From positions 1 to 64,000 of the forward strand of contig CDMY01000859.1 of the NCBI GenBank assembly GCA_001179505.1: DNA of 64,000 nucleotides, written 5' to 3'. A program made the position numbers and the translations under genes. This document shows positions 5,477 to 12,312 of the stretch, one piece after another. Position 1 is the first letter of the stretch. Each line of letters begins with the position of its first letter. The DNA comes from Vitrella brassicaformis CCMP3155. Lineage: Eukaryota; Protista; Chromerida. The notes under the pieces are model-generated. The model searched no databases and was not told the DNA's origin. It was given only the letters and a program-made list of their open reading frames with translations.

Positions 5477-6272
5477 GTGTGTGCGGCGTGAAGCAGCTGA
5501 CGGTTGACGGGCGTCTTCTGCATTGAGGGTGAGGCCGATGTGGTGCAGGAGTCTGCACCACCTCATCCTAGTCCTCGAGGCCCAGACGCCCATCGGCGTC
5601 GCTCTTCTCCGCTTCAACACCGACGACGTCTCGGCCAGCCTTTGTGGGTGGCAGCGGCTCGGTTGTGTCATGTTGGCGTTGATGTGAGTAGGCCTGGAGA
5701 CCTAGATCTGGGTTGGTTCCTCTTCTGATCCAGATCTAGATCTCCAGCGCGACTTCGACGTGAACCTCAACGTGAACATCCGGCCAGAGCGGTGTGTCTT
5801 GTGCATTGCGAATGAGGAGGCTTTTTCCTCCCGTCTCTGTTGGGATGGCTCTCTTCCGTCTGACTGGCTGTGCAAATGTAGTGCAGCGACACGTGTACAT
5901 AGACCTACTTACGAGGACATGTGTCTATCTGCGAGCGCATGATCCCCGAGCCCCGGCACGTGGGACAGTGGTGACCTGGTGAAAATGATCATTTTCGTTG
6001 CGATGATCTTCCACCTGGGGCAATTGAGTCGCCCAGACAGATGGACTTGATGTACATGAAAGGGATCCCACTGCAAACTGCAAAGCTGCTTCAGCGTCCT
6101 TCCTCTCCCTCTCTCCCCTTCCCTCGCCTGCGAGCTTTTCAATTTGGCATTGTCTTATCATCGACGTTCTTTTCGACAAACAGCATCACTGTCAGCTTGC
6201 TGGTGCTATACTGAAGCATTCTGCTCACCCACATACGCTCACGTGGACATTTCAGCAATCTTTGTCTTCGAA

Positions 6273-7817
6273 ATGGAGCCGCCAGAGCCCAGTGCGCCTC
6301 GTGGAGGCCACACAGAAGCCCCACCACGCACCTCGCCACCATCAGACGCCAACGAGGCGACTACTGCCAGGCACCGGTCGCGAACAGCTCGTCCATCGAA
6401 CACGCCAGCTGCAGCATCATCCAGAAGACGGCACGACACGAGAGGGTCACAACAGTCCGGACGGAGCAGCCACGTGAGCCAGGGGAAGGGATTTGTGGTC
6501 AACAACTTCACTCAGCAGCGGCTGAAGGCGTGGCAGCCGATCCTCACGCCATGCTGGATGATATGCACCTTCTATGTGGTCGGCCTGACGCTGCTCGTCA
6601 TCGGTGCGGTGCTGCTCAGTGCGTCGAGCGACATATACGAGTGCGTGCAGCGGTACGACCAGAAGGGCAAGCTCGAGACCACCATCCAGATGACCTTCAG
6701 CGCCGATGAGTGTGTGGGGCCGAAGCGGCACATCGACACGATCCCCGGGCCTGTGTACGTCTACTACGAGCTGAGCAACTTCCACCAGAACTATCGCACG
6801 TACGTCAACAGCAGGAGCTTCGCCCAGCTGCGCGGCGGGGTCATCACCGACACAGACCGGCTGCTGACCTGCAAGCCATGGGTTTCTTATAAAAAAAAGG
6901 AAGACAATGAAGAAAAGGAGATTATCTACTCGCCATGTGGCCTCATCGCCCGCAGCGTCTTCAACGACACCTACTCGTTCTACCAGACCAACCCCACTAC
7001 TGGCCTGCGGGAGAGCGTCACCGTGGATGATTCCCTGGAGACCCTCGTCTTCGCAATGGACAGGAGGAGCCGCTATCAGCGGCAAGAGCAGTACTTCGAG
7101 TCACCCTTCGGGGGTGACGAGAGGCGGTACCAGAATCCGCGGACCAACCACACCAATGTGGCTCAGTGGCTGCTGGTGCCGGGGACCTATGGGGCCCCGC
7201 AGGTGTTCAACGAGAGCGGCCAGCCGCTGTTCCCTGGGGGCGTGGCCGACCCGCATTTCATCGTGTGGATGAGGACGGCGCCGCTGCCAAACTTCAGGTG
7301 GGCAAGGGATTCCGGAGGATGCATGGACGCCGGCCGGTAAGGCGCTGATGTGTGTCTGCGTGTGTGTCCGTGTATGTCTGTTCAGGAAGATGTGGGGCAA
7401 GCTGGTGCTGCCCGGTGACGAGCTGGTGCTGCCAATCGACGTCGAGATCGACAACCGTAAGCCAAACAACGTGGCAGCCAGGGATATCAGGCCAGCTCAT
7501 CTCTCTCTCTCTCCCTCTCTGTTGTGTGATCGTCCAGGGTATCCTGTAGGGGGTTTCGGCGGAGCTAAGAAGCTGGTGCTGTCGACGGCCAACTGGCAGG
7601 GGGGGCGGGACTTCTTCCTCGCCGGGGCATACTTCGCATTCGGGGCGCTGCTCTTCCTGCTGGGGCTCGTCTTCTCCTGCAAATACCTCAGGAAACCAAG
7701 GTCGGTGACGCAGGACGCGCAGACCCACCACAGATGGCCATGTGTCTGACTGTCTTGGGCGTTCCTTCCTTCAGGCCTTTGGGGGATGTGAACTATCTGC
7801 ATTGGGTCCGCAAGTGA
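6273..7817 (+). CDS. CDC50: CDC50/LEM3 family P4-ATPase (flippase) beta subunit; 4 exons
   Basis: FTQQRLKAWQPILTP plus TM1; VYVYYELSNFHQNYRTYVNSRS; PCGLIARSVFNDTY; HFIVWMRTAPLPNFR|KMWG; KKLVLSTANWQGGRDFFL plus TM2; ends RPLGDVNYLHWVRK*. Confidence 0.96.
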
Positions 7818-9153
7818 TGGATGCCCCGATGCTTCCTTCAAGGAGGGAGGGAGGGAGGGAGGGAGGCAGAGGTCCTGTCTTTGGCTCTTTTTCTGTGTTT
7901 ATTGCGGGTTCGGGAGATCAGAGGAGTGTTTGTCAGTCAGGGAAAGGGATCATGATGCGCGTCAGTTTGTACAGTCCAGATTACAGCACGGCGCAGTGTG
8001 GTGACTGTGTGACGCATTTATGTGTATGTGCGTGAATCCCTCTTTGTCTGCCGCGTGTGATGTGGACACACTGTCCAGCTCGGGAAAGCCTACTGTTCGC
8101 CTCAGCGTGCCGTCACAGCATAAGCATAGCCACACACACACATGGAAGGAGGCATCCATCCATCCATCCATCGACTGTCGTCACGACACCCATCAGACAG
8201 ACACACCCACATGTGTTCATCCTCACCTCACCCACAGCACACACAAACGGCAACGGCACGGACACACAAAGACTTAACCAGGGACGTATACAGCAACATC
8301 ACATAAGTGGAGAGGACAGTTTAGCCAGACAGACAGGCAGACAGGCAGACAGACAGACAGACAAGGCGGCCCCGTAAGGGATAAATAGGACAATGTGAGA
8401 CACATTTAGATAGTGTACACACGCACGCGAACCACGACACCGTCAGGTACAAGTAGGCACAGTCACACTCAACACAGGTACCGTACGTGAAATGTATGCA
8501 GCTAGCTACCCTACCGTCCACTTCTTGCGGGAATACACGTACAAATAGGTGCTCCCCATGCATAGCATACCCCGTACCACTCCACCGTCTCAGAGAAAAG
8601 ATGACTGACACGCATAGCACACCATCCAATATCTATATATAGACCAGAGACCACTCAGTTGAAGAACAGACCCACTTGCCGTCTCTATCTGCCCATCTGT
8701 CCATCCATGAATCCATCCATGAATCCATCCATGTGTGTAAAATACAAAACGCAAACGAATTGGGAGTGATGTCGTCAGTCAGTCAGTCAACAATTAAGGC
8801 CAAAAGAAATCATGGTCAAGCACCTCAGGCAGACAGCAACAATGCAATCAATGAATGCATTCACGGCAGCATCAGCATCAGCATCGCCTGCCTTTCGTTC
8901 CCTCAGCTACCTAAATGGTGCCCCTCCCTCCCGCCCCTCTAACATGGACGCGTGCATGTGCGGCGTGCGTGCGCGTCGATCTCACCATGGGCCTGGACGG
9001 CACGGACACGGTGAGCAATGATGCATTGACGCCATGGATGGATGTGTAGGTGGGTGGGTGTAAGAGAGATGCATTGGACAAATATAGAATCAATCAAGGA
9101 AGAGAGAGAGAGGGGGGGGAGGGAGGGAGGGAGGGAGGGAGGGGGGAAACCGG

Positions 9154-10959
9154 CTACAGGGGAGGGGAGGGGGTCTTCTTGTAGTAGCAGGCAATGATGC
9201 CACTGAACACACACCAACCACACACACGGAAGGGACCGGTATGCATGTCTATGTCTTCGTTGTGTCTGTGTCTCTTGGCCTACTGTGGCGCATCTTGGTC
9301 GTAGCAACAGCCGCGGTCCTCACACTGAATCAAGGACCCAGCACAAAGACAGGGACAAGGAGAGATCACTCCACACACGTGCCGTCACGCCAGTCAGTGT
9401 CTCACTCAGCGCTCACGCACCACTTGTGGGTCGATGCCCATCCATCCGCAGTCGGCTCTCTGCTCCCACCCGACGCCACAGACCTCTTCGCCCCCATTCT
9501 CCTGCTCCTGGCTCGGCTCAGGTGGCGCACCCCCTGTCCCGCTTGATGGGTTGTCGCCCCCATACACCTGCTCTGCCTGCGCTGAGTCCTCCACGTAGTC
9601 GCCGTCGACAACCAGGTGGTCCGTCTGCTCCTCACCTGTCGCTGAGGGCCCGTTGGTGGCCTCTTCTGCAGCAGTGGAGCCGCCGTCCTCAGAGGGCAGC
9701 CCGGTGGCCTGCTCGTAATCGTAGTCGTATTCATACTCGTACTCGGACTTCTTGGCACCACCCGCACCCTACAGAAATGGGCGGCATGGTCTCTCGGCAT
9801 ATTGTGTGTGTGTGTGAGGCGGGGTGGGGTGGGGTACATACCATGTTCTTTCTTGGGTACTGGCCTTTTCCCTTGCCACGTGCTTGGTGACCCTGCTGCT
9901 GCTGCTGCCTCTGCCTGCTGCCCGCCGGCCGTCTGTTGGATGTGGTCTGTGGCTGCCCCTGATTGCCGTTGCCGTGCCTCATCTGCTGCTGCTGCTGGTG
10001 AACACCCTGGTTGCCCGCTCCCTGCGGCGGCGGCGGCGGCGGCTGTTGTTCGTTCCATGCCTCTGTTGTTCCTTCGCTGGACGATTGGGGGTTGTTGATG
10101 TGTGGCTGTGGGTTGGGGATGAGGCCGCCGCCGGCATTGGAGAACTCAGCATCGGGCGGATTGATGACTGGCCTGGGTACGGGTGTGTGGGCGTTGTCCT
10201 GGTACAGCTGCTCCTCCTGGTTGATCTTGTGTGAGTTCTCGAGCTCGTTCCAGATGCCGTCGTGGTCGTAGTTGGGCCGCAGGTTGTGCTGCTCGCCGCA
10301 CCACTTGGGCCCGAAAGTGCTGCAGCAGAAGGGCTCGTTGCCGGTGTTGTTGACCCGCCTGGCGTCCTTGCCATTGAGCCAGCAGTTCTGCTCCTCCATG
10401 ATGGGCTTGTGCACCCAGTAGAGACAGCCCTCGGTCTCCTGGCAGATCTGCTGACACCGCCGGGCTGACGGCACGTAGTCGCGGGCAGGGTTGGTGCTCA
10501 GCTCGCCCCCAAGCATGTCCATCCCGTATGTGTAACACTTGTTAGCTGCGGAGGAGACCAACACACGGACACAGAGAGAGAGGGAGGGAACAAGTGTGTC
10601 CTTCCCTGTGTGTGTTGCCCTCTGCTGTGCGTCCGTCACGTTCTCTGCTCACTCTTGTCGTGTTTGTCATCAGGTATGGTGGGCACGACTGTGGCGTTGC
10701 GGTAGTGGACGTTGAGGGCGAGGTAGTGTCCGCCGACCACCTGGATGCGCTCGGGGATGAACTCGACGAGGTTGATGAGGTCGGAGCCCTCGTTGGGCCC
10801 GTAGATGTTCCACGAGAAGCCGCGGAAGTCGTCGAACCACTGGGGCTCGAACTTGCGGGACTCCTCGTCCCATGCCGAGAACTTGATGAAGTCCACGTAG
10901 GTGGTGATGGGCAGAAGATGCTCCTCCTTGTAGATACCCGCCCAGTACTGGGCCCACCT

Positions 10960-10992
<33 letters not shown>

Positions 10993-12033
10993 CGAAGTGC
11001 GGAGTGGTGAGCGCAAGGTGGGTGGAGAGGGAGGGGTAGTACCATTCTCTGGGGTCGATGATCCATGCGTTGAAGTAGAGCCTCATGGGTTCCGTCATGA
11101 GGTTAACCTGTGGATTGCAGCCCTTGTTCTCATCCTCCTCATTCACACCAGGCGGACACGCATTGTCCTGCACACGCACACATACAAATGCAGCGAGGTG
11201 ACAACCCTCCTCCCATGTCCAGGTTGCTTTCTCGTCTCCCGGACTCGACTCACCCAGCGGATGACCTTGCCGTCATAGAACCACGCTATGTGTCCAGGTG
11301 TCCACTCGAGAGTGTACGTGTGCCACCTCTTCTTGACCTCCCAGGTCTGCGCCTCGTGGTTGGCGGCCACCCCAGGGGCGGCGTAGAACTCCTCCTTGAT
11401 CTTGCGGCCGCTCTCCCAGCCCCACCCCGTAATGATGTTGGTCTGTATGGGGGTGTCCTTGAACCAGCCCTTGCCGTGCACTTCGAAATCCACCTCCTGC
11501 CAGCTGTTCGTTCCGGCCTTGTTGGTCTGGTTGACGTACAGAAAGAAGGCCGGCACCAAGCCGTCCATGTCGAAATTGGTCAGCCACCGGATCTCGAAGC
11601 GGCCGTAGTGGAAGAACTCGTGAGTGACCATACTCGCCCCCGTGATGTATCGGTGCCGACAGACCTTCGGGTTGGGGTCCCACGCACACGTGCCGTCAGG
11701 CCTCCAGCCCCCGGGATACACGCCGTCAGGAGGCGTTTCCGTTTCCAGAGCGACGGTGCCCTCCCCTTCTCTCGCTCCCTGCGGCTTCACTTGCCCACCT
11801 TTGTTGTGGCCACCTTGATTGCCTCCAGCTGCGTGTTGTTGTGGCTGCTGACCGTGCTTGCCCGGCACTTGAAGGCCGCTCGCTACAGGGGCGCTCTTGT
11901 GGATGCCGAGAGTGTCATAGTCGACAAGTGGCATCAGGTCTGGGTCGACGGGCGTCCTTCCCCAGCCATTTGCGAAGGGCGCCATGGCGGCAGACAGGGG
12001 CAGCGCCGCGGCGAGGGCGAGAAAGCGCTTCAT
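9154..12033 (-). CDS. Secreted modular glycoside hydrolase: signal peptide, circularly permuted GH16 (lichenase-type ExDxE), PAN/apple, Q/P-rich linker, trefoil (P-type) domain
   Basis: MKRFLALAAALPLSAA signal. GH16 motifs YGRFEIR, WQEVDFEV (11482-11496), WHTYTLEWTP..IAWFYDG, EPMRLYFNAW. PAN CYTYGMDMLG...CQQICQETEGC..W...CWL...GPKWC. Trefoil CGVGWEQRADCGWMGIDPQV|CEDRGCCYDQDAPH|GIIACYYKK. Introns were checked for phase. Confidence 0.9.
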
Positions 12034-12312
12034 ATGCCCTTTCCGAATGACCCCTCTTCTGGGGGATAAGGAGGGCTTTGTTCCCCTGCTGGCCTGCGAC
12101 TGGAAGCGGTACGGGCCGCGAGGTACTATTATTTTGCCGTACTTGTATTTCGGCGGCCGCTTGCAGCCGCCAACGGTCCAAAGGCGTTTCAGCCTGACAG
12201 AACTTTTTGGCTTTCGTTTCGTTTTCGCTTTTCTCTCTGTGGTTGTCTTCCCTTCTTCTCCTTTTCTCTCGTTCGCGCGATTCCTTCCCCTTCCAGCAGT
12301 CCTCCCAGCGAG

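What the first reader, a model, noticed from the sequence alone, without database searches (positions are those of the whole stretch)
10660..11660. Circularly permuted, Fibrobacter-type GH16 beta-glucanase in a eukaryote
Seen in sequence: the domain runs ITGASMVTHEFFHYGRFEIR - GLVPAFFLY - WQEVDFEVHGK - IQTNIITG - WHTYTLEWTP..IAWFYDG - MRLYFNAW - WAGIY...TYVDFIKF. Only after that comes FEPQWFDDFRGFSW...LVEFIPERIQVVGGHYLALNV. Established: in canonical Bacillus lichenases the 'F.D.F...W...N....G.L.L' segment is N-terminal, while the Fibrobacter succinogenes 1,3-1,4-beta-glucanase is a natural circular permutant with it at the C-terminus. As I recall that enzyme (FSGAELYT..YGKFEARM, WVEVDIEVLGK, FQSNIITG, FHTYGLEWTP, LRFNLW, WTDNFD...GMLILAL), the match is block-for-block. 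ExDxE without a beta-bulge is the lichenase/XTH-type active site. Inference: bacterial origin by HGT, followed by intron gain.
Basis: partly seen in the sequence, partly recalled or inferred. Interest (0 to 1): 0.85.

Follow-up and report, generated by a model that had tools for sequence, protein, structure and literature searches.

The report
Permuted bacterial-type glucanase in Vitrella alga
The alga Vitrella brassicaformis, a photosynthetic cousin of malaria-type parasites, has a spliced, expressed gene for a secreted beta-glucanase whose chain order is the rare "circularly permuted" one known from Fibrobacter; it is an old bacterial gift that multiplied into a gene family, and its substrate is untested.

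Summary
Observation confirmed; interpretation supported. Window 9154-12033 (minus strand) holds a 7-exon gene for a 783-aa protein, Vitrella brassicaformis CEM35548.1. All six GT..AG introns are joined in a spliced public contig.

The protein has a signal peptide, a linker, a GH16 domain (aa 129-385), PAN/apple, a Q/P-rich linker and a trefoil domain.

The GH16 domain is circularly permuted:
- It is colinear with the Fibrobacter succinogenes 1,3-1,4-beta-glucanase (phmmer E 7.5e-16).
- An AlphaFold model (pLDDT 91.5) matches that enzyme at Z 32.5, 1.6 A, 233 of 234 residues.
- Native-order Bacillus lichenases align over only 161 residues (Z about 16).
- The catalytic E180-x-D182-x-E184 motif is intact.

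At least 11 Vitrella paralogues exist. Nine form one clade (bootstrap 97) nested inside a wide bacterial permuted clade (Fibrobacterota, Bacteroidota, Cellvibrio, Polyangiaceae and others). The donor lineage is unresolved, so "Fibrobacter-type" names the topology, not the donor. No other eukaryote appeared in the searches, and I found no paper describing this.

Activity and substrate are inferred. The Trp203 stacking platform of the bacterial enzyme is Gly here.

The scan had already found paralogues of this family on other DNA of the same genome (for example s1-218430), with the same reading.

The parts
9154..12033 (-). Whole coding region of the gene: 7 exons, 783 aa, equal to protein P0001 / CEM35548.1 of Vitrella brassicaformis. 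Start ATG at 12033-12031, stop TAG at 9156-9154.
   Evidence: My splice model equals the database protein found at 100% identity. A spliced 2347-nt contig in run X4 covers 9152-12026 with all joints.
11254..12033 (-). Exon 1 (aa 1-260): signal peptide (about aa 1-17, window 11983-12033), G/Q-rich linker, and the first 132 residues of the GH16 core.
   Evidence: ORF and translation. Pfam GH16 at aa 130-259/261. The signal peptide is judged by eye from the hydrophobic N-terminus and was not tested with a predictor.
11482..11496 (-). Catalytic motif E180-V-D182-F-E184: ExDxE without a beta-bulge.
   Evidence: Read from the sequence. It aligns with E56-D58-E60 of the F. succinogenes enzyme. These columns are invariant or nearly invariant in alignments A1 and A2.
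11168..11253 (-). Intron 1 (GT..AG, phase 0, after W260), inside the GH16 domain.
   Evidence: Joint 11166/11253 (cut +1) in the spliced contig of X4. Splice sites.
11043..11167 (-). Exon 2 (aa 261-302, partial): a Vitrella-specific loop with a Cys pair (C264, C277), then the ..MRLYFNAW.. strand.
   Evidence: The insertion relative to bacterial homologues is visible in alignment A1.
10958..11042 (-). Intron 2 (GT..AG, phase 2, inside codon W302), holding a (CTGT)n repeat.
   Evidence: The pieces of the X4 contig (records 1444/1448) fit a joint at 10957|11043. The reads tool skipped the repeat at 10953-10999. Splice sites.
10653..10957 (-). Exon 3 (aa 302-404, partial): the end of the GH16 core plus the transposed segment.
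10708..10854 (-). Transposed segment (aa 337-385, KFEPQWFDDF...HYLALNV). These strands are N-terminal in Bacillus-type lichenases and C-terminal here.
   Evidence: Segment HMM hit at aa 337-385, downstream of the core. It aligns with FTLDWTDNFDTF... of 3axd. Model strands there have pLDDT 86-98. Model residues 16-289 align with chain 4-244 of 3axe.
10376..10519 (-). PAN/apple-like domain (aa 413-460) in exon 4 (9842-10545). A Q/P-rich low-complexity linker follows.
   Evidence: Pfam PAN_4 scores 24.9-26.7 bits, just under the 27-bit cutoff. Paralogues P0016 and P0086 carry PAN domains above cutoff.
9178..9480 (-). Trefoil (P-type) domain, aa 735-776, split over exons 5 (9421-9768), 6 (9284-9324) and 7 (9154-9202).
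   Evidence: Pfam PF00088 at 38.9 bits (cutoff 21), covering profile 1-43 of 43. Joints 9202|9284 and 9324|9421 are in the spliced contig.

Best explanation
SHOWN: This is a nuclear, intron-bearing, transcribed gene of Vitrella brassicaformis. It encodes a multidomain protein whose hydrophobic N-terminus looks like a signal peptide (judged by eye, no predictor run). Its GH16 beta-jelly-roll has the same circularly permuted chain order as the Fibrobacter succinogenes 1,3-1,4-beta-glucanase. The strands that open a Bacillus lichenase lie at the C-terminal end of the domain. The catalytic E-x-D-x-E triad and the family's conserved core residues are intact. The gene belongs to a Vitrella family of at least 11 paralogues. 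The nine tested form one clade nested inside a broad bacterial radiation of permuted GH16 enzymes.

INFERRED (strong): One ancestral gene came from a Gram-negative bacterium by horizontal transfer; the donor phylum is unresolved. It then acquired spliceosomal introns, three lineage-specific loops (one with a Cys pair) and an upstream conserved Cys. It was fused to PAN/apple modules and duplicated. In this copy a trefoil domain was added.

INFERRED (weaker): The protein is secreted. It acts as a retaining endo-beta-glucanase, or transglycosylase, on a mixed-linkage or related beta-glucan. The PAN and trefoil modules hold it on a glycan or protein surface. The most likely target is the alga's own multilayered wall or sporangium, for remodelling or release of daughter cells. 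Extracellular glucans of neighbours are the second choice.
For: - Gene model and expression: six GT..AG introns are all joined in a 2347-nt contig of run X4, and two of them again in X5. The model equals database protein P0001.
- Organism.
- GH16 membership.
- Permutation by sequence: the match is colinear with 3axd/1mve (query 31-269 to chain 7-212, E 7.5e-16), while Bacillus-type chains match only query 36-159 at E about 1e-6.
- Permutation by structure: model pLDDT 91.5, pTM 0.89. Foldseek's top nine are F. succinogenes structures (TM 0.86-0.92). Next come the engineered permuted Bacillus proteins 1cpm/1cpn (about 0.8). Native Bacillus enzymes score about 0.5. VIA-align gives Z 32.5, rmsd 1.6 A and 233/234 residues for 3axe. 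Native Bacillus gets Z about 16 and 161 residues, model 14-220 against chain 54-214 only.
- Bacterial relatives: 223 of 268 fetched homologues and 78 of 78 GTDB loci have the permuted order. They come from Fibrobacterota, Bacteroidota, Cellvibrionaceae, Polyangiaceae, Verrucomicrobiota and Spirochaetota.
- Tree: nine Vitrella paralogues form one clade (97/83), seven of them 100/99, below two 100/98 nodes of bacterial permuted sequences.
- No other eukaryote: exhaustive and Vitrella-profile searches found none. Scores drop from 295 bits (Vitrella) to 199 bits (bacteria).
- Shared Vitrella-only loops and an invariant upstream Cys.
- Intron positions differ between paralogues.
- Possible substrate: mixed-linkage glucan has been reported in the wall of the dinoflagellate Peridinium, another alveolate (PMC7997180).
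Against: - No enzymatic, localisation or wall-composition data exist for Vitrella, so activity, substrate and site of action are inference only.
- The residue matching Trp203 of the bacterial enzyme is Gly in this protein and His in most paralogues. PDB entry titles name Trp203 as a carbohydrate-stacking aromatic residue. Together with the three extra loops near the cleft, this could change specificity.
- This copy is the most divergent of the core paralogues: 33% identity to the nearest and a long branch of 1.2.
- The sister lineage changed between trees, so no donor can be named.
- The PAN match is just below Pfam's cutoff.
- The language-model atlas listed one 'Chlorophyta' GH16 cluster as similar. 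I could not test it, so 'Vitrella only' is provisional.
Confidence: 0.75

Rival explanations
1. The domain keeps the fold but works mainly as a glycan-binding (lectin-like) module. The protein would be an adhesin or sensor made of three binding modules (GH16, PAN, trefoil) rather than an enzyme.
For: Two paralogues have lost the acid/base Glu (P0008 E-I-D-Y-Q, P0086 E-I-D-I-T) and are membrane-anchored, so the family does yield non-catalytic members. The Trp203 platform is lost in this copy. PAN and trefoil are binding modules.
Against: This copy keeps E180, D182 and E184. It also keeps every invariant and nearly invariant residue of the 94-sequence family alignment. Nine of eleven paralogues keep the triad.
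Confidence: 0.12
2. The enzyme is a feeding or foraging hydrolase. It would be secreted to digest beta-glucans of other organisms on the coral surface (bacterial exopolysaccharides, algal or fungal walls), not to act on Vitrella's own wall.
For: The bacterial relatives are secreted polysaccharide degraders, many with T9SS tails or CBMs. An earlier scan note reports other bacterial-type secreted glycosidases in this genome (s1-226978; untested here).
Against: The family has membrane-anchored and catalytically dead members and PAN fusions. That pattern resembles wall or surface biology more than bulk digestion. There is no direct evidence either way.
Confidence: 0.2
3. The permuted order arose independently in a vertically inherited eukaryotic GH16 (convergence), so no bacterial transfer took place.
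For: Circular permutation of this fold is tolerated at this site, as engineered permuted Bacillus proteins fold natively (1cpm/1cpn). Tandem duplication, which can create permutants, is seen in P0007.
Against: The whole domain is colinear with bacterial permuted enzymes at about 30% identity. The Vitrella clade is nested below two 100/98 nodes inside them. No native-order eukaryotic relative is closer, and no other eukaryote carries the family.
Confidence: 0.03
4. The sequence is bacterial contamination or an assembly chimera in the Vitrella assembly.
For: None beyond the bacterial affinity of the domain.
Against: There are six spliceosomal introns, removed in RNA-derived contigs. The reading frame continues into PAN and trefoil domains. 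The gene lies on a 244-kb contig of about 58% GC with neighbouring multi-exon genes. Ten further paralogues lie on other contigs.
Confidence: 0.01

Closest known systems
Fibrobacter succinogenes 1,3-1,4-beta-D-glucanase (PDB 1MVE, 1ZM1, 2R49, 3AXD/3AXE, 3H0O, 3HR9), the natural circularly permuted jelly-roll
   Same: It has the same chain order and the same fold (Z 32.5, rmsd 1.6 A, 233 of 234 residues). It shares the ExDxE triad and the Phe40/Tyr42 equivalents. The sequence is colinear over the whole domain.
   Different: Identity is only about 30%. The Vitrella gene is eukaryotic and has two introns inside the domain. It has three inserted loops, one with a Cys pair, and a conserved upstream Cys. 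The Trp203 equivalent is Gly. The partner domains are PAN and trefoil, not bacterial tails. F. succinogenes itself lies in a different subclade of the tree.
Bacillus/Paenibacillus lichenases (GH16_21; 1GBG, 1MAC, 3O5S) and their engineered permutants (1CPM, 1CPN)
   Same: They share the GH16 jelly-roll and the ExDxE motif without a beta-bulge. The engineered permutants share the chain order and align over their full length (Z about 26).
   Different: Native enzymes align only over chain 54-214 (Z about 16, 161 residues), because their first roughly 53 residues correspond to the C-terminal segment here. Sequence E-values are about 1e-6, against 1e-15 for the permuted enzyme.
Lichenases of anaerobic gut fungi (Neocallimastigomycota), the eukaryotic GH16_21 members known so far
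   Same: They are bacterial lichenase-type GH16 genes acquired by a eukaryote (PMC8711696 and PMC6827312).
   Different: PMC8711696 places them inside the Firmicutes licheninase clade; the Firmicutes-type lichenases examined here have the native chain order, though the fungal sequences themselves were not checked. The Vitrella family is permuted and groups with Gram-negative lineages. PMC8711696 describes eukaryotic GH16_21 as confined to those fungi.
Plant XTH/EG16 and fungal Crh transglycosylases (GH16_20, GH16_18/19)
   Same: They are ExDxE GH16 enzymes proposed to descend from bacterial GH16_21-like genes, expanded into families that remodel the organism's own wall (PMC8711696). They are structurally related at Z about 15-16.
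   Different: They have the native chain order and a different proposed donor (Alphaproteobacteria ExoK). A wall-remodelling role for the Vitrella family is only a hypothesis.
Vitrella paralogues (P0002, P0003/P0151, P0004, P0006, P0008, P0016, P0086, P0284, P0285, fragment P0025)
   Same: They share the permuted order, the lineage-specific loops and the conserved upstream Cys, and PAN fusions are frequent. They form one clade in the tree.
   Different: This copy is the only one seen with a trefoil domain. It is the most divergent core member at 33% identity. Intron positions differ between copies. P0008 and P0086 lack the acid/base Glu.

Membership tests
Glycoside hydrolase family 16 (Pfam PF00722) | Significant match to the family profile | tested here: met
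   E 1.7e-14, 54 bits against a cutoff of 22. The match covers profile positions 29-135 of 175, so the first 28 profile positions are missing at the N-terminus, as expected for a permutant.
Glycoside hydrolase family 16 | Beta-jelly-roll fold | tested here: met
   The AlphaFold model has pLDDT 91.5 and pTM 0.89. All top structural matches are GH16. This is a predicted model, not a solved structure.
Lichenase/XTH-type GH16 (GH16_18 to _21 group) | Active-site strand ExDxE without the beta-bulge (not ExDxxE) | tested here: met
   The motif is W-Q-E180-V-D182-F-E184. The criterion is as stated in PMC6827312.
Naturally circularly permuted GH16 (F. succinogenes type) | The 'N-terminal' strands of native lichenases lie C-terminal to the catalytic core, once only | tested here: met
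   The core HMM hits aa 129-331 and the segment HMM hits aa 337-385, with no upstream copy. The alignment with 3axd is colinear.
Naturally circularly permuted GH16 (F. succinogenes type) | Sequence-order-dependent structural alignment covers the whole permuted enzyme but only part of a native-order enzyme | tested here: met
   3axe: 233 of 234 residues, Z 32.5. 1gbg, 1mac and 3o5s: 161 residues, chain 54-214 only, Z about 16.
Licheninase, EC 3.2.1.73 | Cleaves beta-1,4 bonds next to beta-1,3 bonds in mixed-linkage glucan, and not pure beta-1,3 or beta-1,4 glucans | not testable with these tools
   This needs an enzyme assay.
Licheninase, F. succinogenes enzyme | Aromatic carbohydrate-stacking residues Phe40, Tyr42 and Trp203 | tested here: not met
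   The Phe40 and Tyr42 equivalents are kept (..AFFLY..). The Trp203 equivalent is Gly in this protein and His in most paralogues. The role of these residues is taken from PDB entry titles and my memory of the papers.
CAZy subfamily GH16_21 | Assignment by the CAZy/dbCAN subfamily models | not testable with these tools
   No subfamily models are on hand. The roadmap paper's main text mentions neither Fibrobacter nor permutation.
Bacterium-to-eukaryote horizontal transfer | The eukaryotic clade is nested within bacterial sequences, other eukaryotes lack it, and the gene is integrated in the nuclear genome | tested here: met
   Nesting lies below two 100/98 nodes and Vitrella monophyly scores 97/83. 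No other eukaryote appears among the hits. The introns are spliced. The donor is unresolved, and eukaryote sampling is limited to what the databases hold.
PAN/apple domain | Pfam match above the gathering score | tested here: inconclusive
   PAN_4 scores 24.9-26.7 bits against a cutoff of 27. The Cys pattern is present.
Trefoil (P-type) domain PF00088 | Pfam match above the gathering score, with the six-Cys pattern | tested here: met
   38.9 bits against a cutoff of 21, covering the full profile 1-43 at aa 735-776.

The most novel reading that the evidence does not exclude
Vitrella may build a wall or sporangium that contains a mixed-linkage-type beta-glucan. Its expanded family of permuted GH16 proteins includes secreted, membrane-anchored and catalytically dead forms, mostly fused to PAN modules. 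That family could be a wall-remodelling and wall-sensing system. It would be a third, independent recruitment of a bacterial lichenase-like GH16 for eukaryotic wall dynamics, after plant XTH/EG16 and fungal Crh, and this time marked unmistakably by the permuted chain order.
Probability: 0.2. Interest if true: 0.75.

Novelty: new variant of a known kind. Interest (0 to 1): 0.5.

Why it matters
The permuted chain order is a rare structural marker, so it makes bacterial ancestry unusually clear for a eukaryotic gene family. I found no paper that describes a permuted GH16 in any eukaryote or any GH16 in Vitrella. The literature I read states that eukaryotic lichenase-type GH16_21 members are confined to anaerobic gut fungi.

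The family shows how one transferred bacterial enzyme became eukaryotic. It gained introns at different places in different copies, disulfide-bearing loops, and fusion to PAN/apple modules, the adhesion module typical of the apicomplexan lineage. It expanded to at least 11 copies, and two copies lost catalysis.

Vitrella is among the closest photosynthetic relatives of Apicomplexa. The family therefore offers a concrete way into the unknown chemistry of chromerid walls and sporangia. HGT of carbohydrate enzymes into protists is common, so this is a clean and instructive case rather than a surprise.

Tried and rejected
- Word-based homologue search with exon 1 alone found nothing. The length window excluded the 783-aa protein, and the bacterial relatives share too few exact words. 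The exhaustive representative search solved this.
- The C-terminal exon alone against PDB gave only a chance P450 hit. The segment is too short, but the full-domain query aligned it correctly.
- A first tree on core columns only placed paralogues P0016 and P0086 apart from the other Vitrella sequences on long branches, hinting at a second acquisition. With the whole domain and a careful search, all nine unite at 97/83, so I dropped that idea.
- I tried to name a donor. The sister group was P0074+P0143 in two trees. P0074 is from a metagenome and lies next to type VI secretion genes. The sister was P0043+P0032 in the later trees. Support was always weak, so no donor is claimed.
- Cluster look-ups of neighbouring sequences mostly returned unnamed metagenome proteins.
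- No run was on record as RNA. Transcription rests on spliced contigs, which show presence and joints but not expression level, strand or transcript ends.
- The atlas 'Chlorophyta' cluster could not be retrieved or tested.
Full report
1. WHAT IS THERE

The finding lies on the minus strand. Reading 9300-12300 and the ORF list gave a seven-exon model:
- 12033-11254
- 11167-11043
- 10957-10653
- 10545-9842
- 9768-9421
- 9324-9284
- 9202-9154 (stop TAG at 9156-9154)

All introns are GT..AG. The exhaustive representative search with aa 100-260 returned a 783-aa protein, P0001, at 100% identity. Its sequence equals this model. It is CEM35548.1 / A0A0G4GWY2, annotated 'GH16 domain-containing protein', from Vitrella brassicaformis CCMP3155, on a 244-kb contig.

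Contigs of public runs were laid on window 9100-12100. One contig of run X4 (2347 nt) covers 9152-12026 and skips every one of the six introns at the predicted bases. The joint at 10957|11043 is partly hidden by a (CTGT)n repeat, but the record coordinates fit it. A contig of X5 repeats two of the joints. The gene is therefore transcribed and spliced as modelled. These are contigs, so they say nothing about expression level or transcript ends.

2. THE OBSERVATION

- Pfam finds GH16 at aa 130-261, covering profile positions 29-135 of 175. The profile's N-terminal part is missing upstream.
- Against PDB sequences, the six best chains are all the F. succinogenes 1,3-1,4-beta-glucanase. The match starts at chain residue 4-7, and E is 6.5e-14 for exon 1 alone, against about 1e-6 for Bacillus-type chains.
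- With aa 100-400 as query, the alignment runs colinearly to chain 204-212. It pairs FEPQWFDDFRGF.. with FTLDWTDNFDTF.., while Bacillus-type chains still match only query 36-159.

3. TOPOLOGY TEST

I aligned 94 homologues with aa 112-400 as first row and predicted the structure. Mean pLDDT is 91.5 and pTM is 0.89. The C-terminal segment (model 221-289) scores 86-98 and forms five strands.

Foldseek against the PDB:
- Ranks 1-9 are F. succinogenes structures (TM by target 0.86-0.92).
- Ranks 10-11 are the engineered circularly permuted Bacillus jelly-rolls 1CPM and 1CPN (0.81 and 0.79).
- Native-order lichenases score about 0.5.

VIA-align makes the reason explicit:
- 3AXE aligns over 233 of 234 residues (Z 32.5, rmsd 1.6 A; model 16-289 to chain 4-244).
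- 1CPN aligns over 206 of 208 residues (Z 26.2).
- Native Bacillus enzymes align over only 161 residues: model 14-220 to chain 54-214, Z about 16.

The first roughly 53 residues of the native enzyme therefore correspond to the C-terminal piece here. The permutation is confirmed as far as a predicted model can confirm it.

4. RELATIVES

The exhaustive search gave 314 hits at E below 1e-3. I built HMMs for the core and for the transposed segment.
- 223 of 268 fetched proteins have core followed by segment, the permuted order.
- All 78 loci found in GTDB species genomes are permuted as well.
- These loci come from Fibrobacter and other Fibrobacterota, Bacteroidales, Cytophagales, Aquimarina, Cellvibrio and Cellvibrionaceae, Marinimicrobium, Alteromonadaceae, Polyangiaceae and Sorangium, Pelagicoccus and Spirochaetales.

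The 'Fibrobacter type' is thus a widespread Gram-negative form. Native-order multi-domain proteins of Firmicutes, such as P0005, served as outgroup.

5. A VITRELLA FAMILY

Cluster look-ups and a Vitrella-only profile search identified these paralogues: P0001, P0002, P0003/P0151, P0004, P0006, P0008, P0016 (=P0272/P0274), P0086, P0284, P0285 and the fragment P0025. All those that carry a source name are from V. brassicaformis; P0285 is an unnamed JGI sequence and is counted as Vitrella only by similarity.

In that profile search, scores fall from 295 bits for the weakest Vitrella member to 199 bits for the best bacterium. No other eukaryote lies in between.

The paralogues share features absent from bacteria:
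- a conserved Cys just before the domain;
- a short insert before PIQTN;
- a roughly 14-residue ..APG..Q.. insert;
- in the seven core members, a loop with two Cys.

A careful IQ-TREE analysis was run on 76 rows and 229 columns (LG+C20 PMSF; the bootstrap had not fully settled). It unites all nine tested paralogues at 97/83 and the seven core ones at 100/99. The clade lies below two 100/98 nodes inside the bacterial permuted clade.

The sister group is weakly supported and changed between analyses. The transfer is well supported; the donor is not identified.

Exact exon mapping shows that the copies do not share this gene's intron positions.
- P0001 (this gene) has domain introns after W260 (phase 0) and inside codon 302 (phase 2).
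- P0002 has a single intron at the core/segment boundary.
- P0004 has one at nearly that same place and another within the ..AYIA|WF.. stretch.

This heterogeneity, and the lack of introns in bacteria, fit intron gain after transfer, partly after duplication.

6. ARCHITECTURE

- P0001 has GH16, PAN_4 (24.9 bits, just below the cutoff) and a full trefoil domain (38.9 bits).
- P0016 and P0086 have clear PAN domains.
- P0006, P0008, P0016 and P0086 have a hydrophobic, probably membrane-spanning stretch near the C-terminus.
- P0008 (E-I-D-Y-Q) and P0086 (E-I-D-I-T) have lost the acid/base Glu. The window's protein keeps E180, D182 and E184.

7. HOW IT PROBABLY WORKS

Established knowledge of GH16 is that it uses a retaining double-displacement mechanism with the first Glu as nucleophile and the last as acid/base. 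Those residues and all conserved family positions are kept. The N-terminus also looks like a signal peptide. I therefore infer an extracellular, active endo-beta-glucanase or transglycosylase.

The substrate is uncertain.
- The closest characterised enzyme is a strict mixed-linkage glucanase.
- The Trp203 equivalent is Gly here, and three loops are added.
- A review records mixed-linkage glucan in the wall of the dinoflagellate Peridinium, another alveolate (PMC7997180). An endogenous wall substrate is therefore conceivable.
- Nothing in the papers I searched covers Vitrella wall chemistry.

I favour wall or sporangium remodelling, with PAN and trefoil as tethers, at roughly 40%. Foraging on foreign glucans comes next at roughly 20%, then a mainly binding role at roughly 12%.

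8. WHAT IS KNOWN

The F. succinogenes enzyme is the textbook natural permutant (PDB 1MVE title). The GH16 subfamily roadmap and the XTH-origin paper list eukaryotic lichenase-type members only in anaerobic gut fungi, nested in Firmicutes. Full-text searches found no paper linking Vitrella with GH16, and none describing a permuted GH16 in a eukaryote. Public databases label the protein only as 'GH16 domain-containing'.

Within this scan, the same family was already noted several times on other pieces of this genome. One note was followed up with the same conclusion (s1-218430). This very stretch was also noted for its architecture (s1-248705).

9. VERDICT

The gene is a eukaryotic, intron-bearing, domain-fused variant of a known bacterial enzyme type, with a well-supported HGT origin and a lineage-specific expansion. 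Its function is still to be tested.

Noticed in passing
P0008 and P0086 (Vitrella paralogues on other contigs): Two membrane-anchored paralogues have lost the general acid/base Glu of the ExDxE motif (E-I-D-Y-Q and E-I-D-I-T). They are likely non-catalytic glucan-binding surface proteins. The other nine paralogues keep the triad.
   Followed up: partly
P0007 (Chitinispirillales / Cellulosispirillum, Fibrobacterota), aa 23-438: This bacterial protein carries core-segment-core in tandem, so it contains both the permuted and the native reading order. That is the arrangement expected for permutation by duplication and truncation. P0048 and P0130 have native order but sit inside the permuted clade in the first tree.
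   Followed up: partly
window 9178-9480 (-): A complete trefoil (P-type) domain lies in an alveolate protein, split over three exons with two short introns. Of the nine paralogues scanned with Pfam, only this one has it.
   Followed up: partly
window 6144-7340 (+): The neighbouring long ORF carries a ..FTQQRLKAWQPILTP.. motif and hydrophobic stretches that look like a CDC50/LEM3 flippase subunit. This is judged by eye only.
   Followed up: no
window 9888-10000 and 10953-10999: The CAG/Gln-rich coding repeat in exon 4 attracts pieces of many unrelated contigs, giving false joints and loose ends in the reads table. Intron 2 holds a (CTGT)n repeat that the reads tool skipped.
   Followed up: no
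Atlas search with P0001:120-395: The language-model search listed a 54-member GH16 fragment cluster labelled Eukaryota/Chlorophyta as second-nearest (score 0.94). Its chain order and true origin could not be checked. If it is permuted, the family would not be Vitrella-only.
   Followed up: no
L079/L080 (metagenome contigs encoding P0074): P0074 was one of the weakly supported nearest bacterial neighbours of the Vitrella clade in two trees. It lies beside type VI secretion genes (IcmF/TssM, DotU, VasE), so it comes from a Gram-negative bacterium.
   Followed up: partly
L081 and L082 (Vitrella loci of P0002 and P0004): P0002 and P0004 each have a phase-1 intron at the boundary between the catalytic core and the transposed segment, one codon apart in the alignment. 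The window's gene has none there. A CBM20-bearing gene lies next to P0004.
   Followed up: partly
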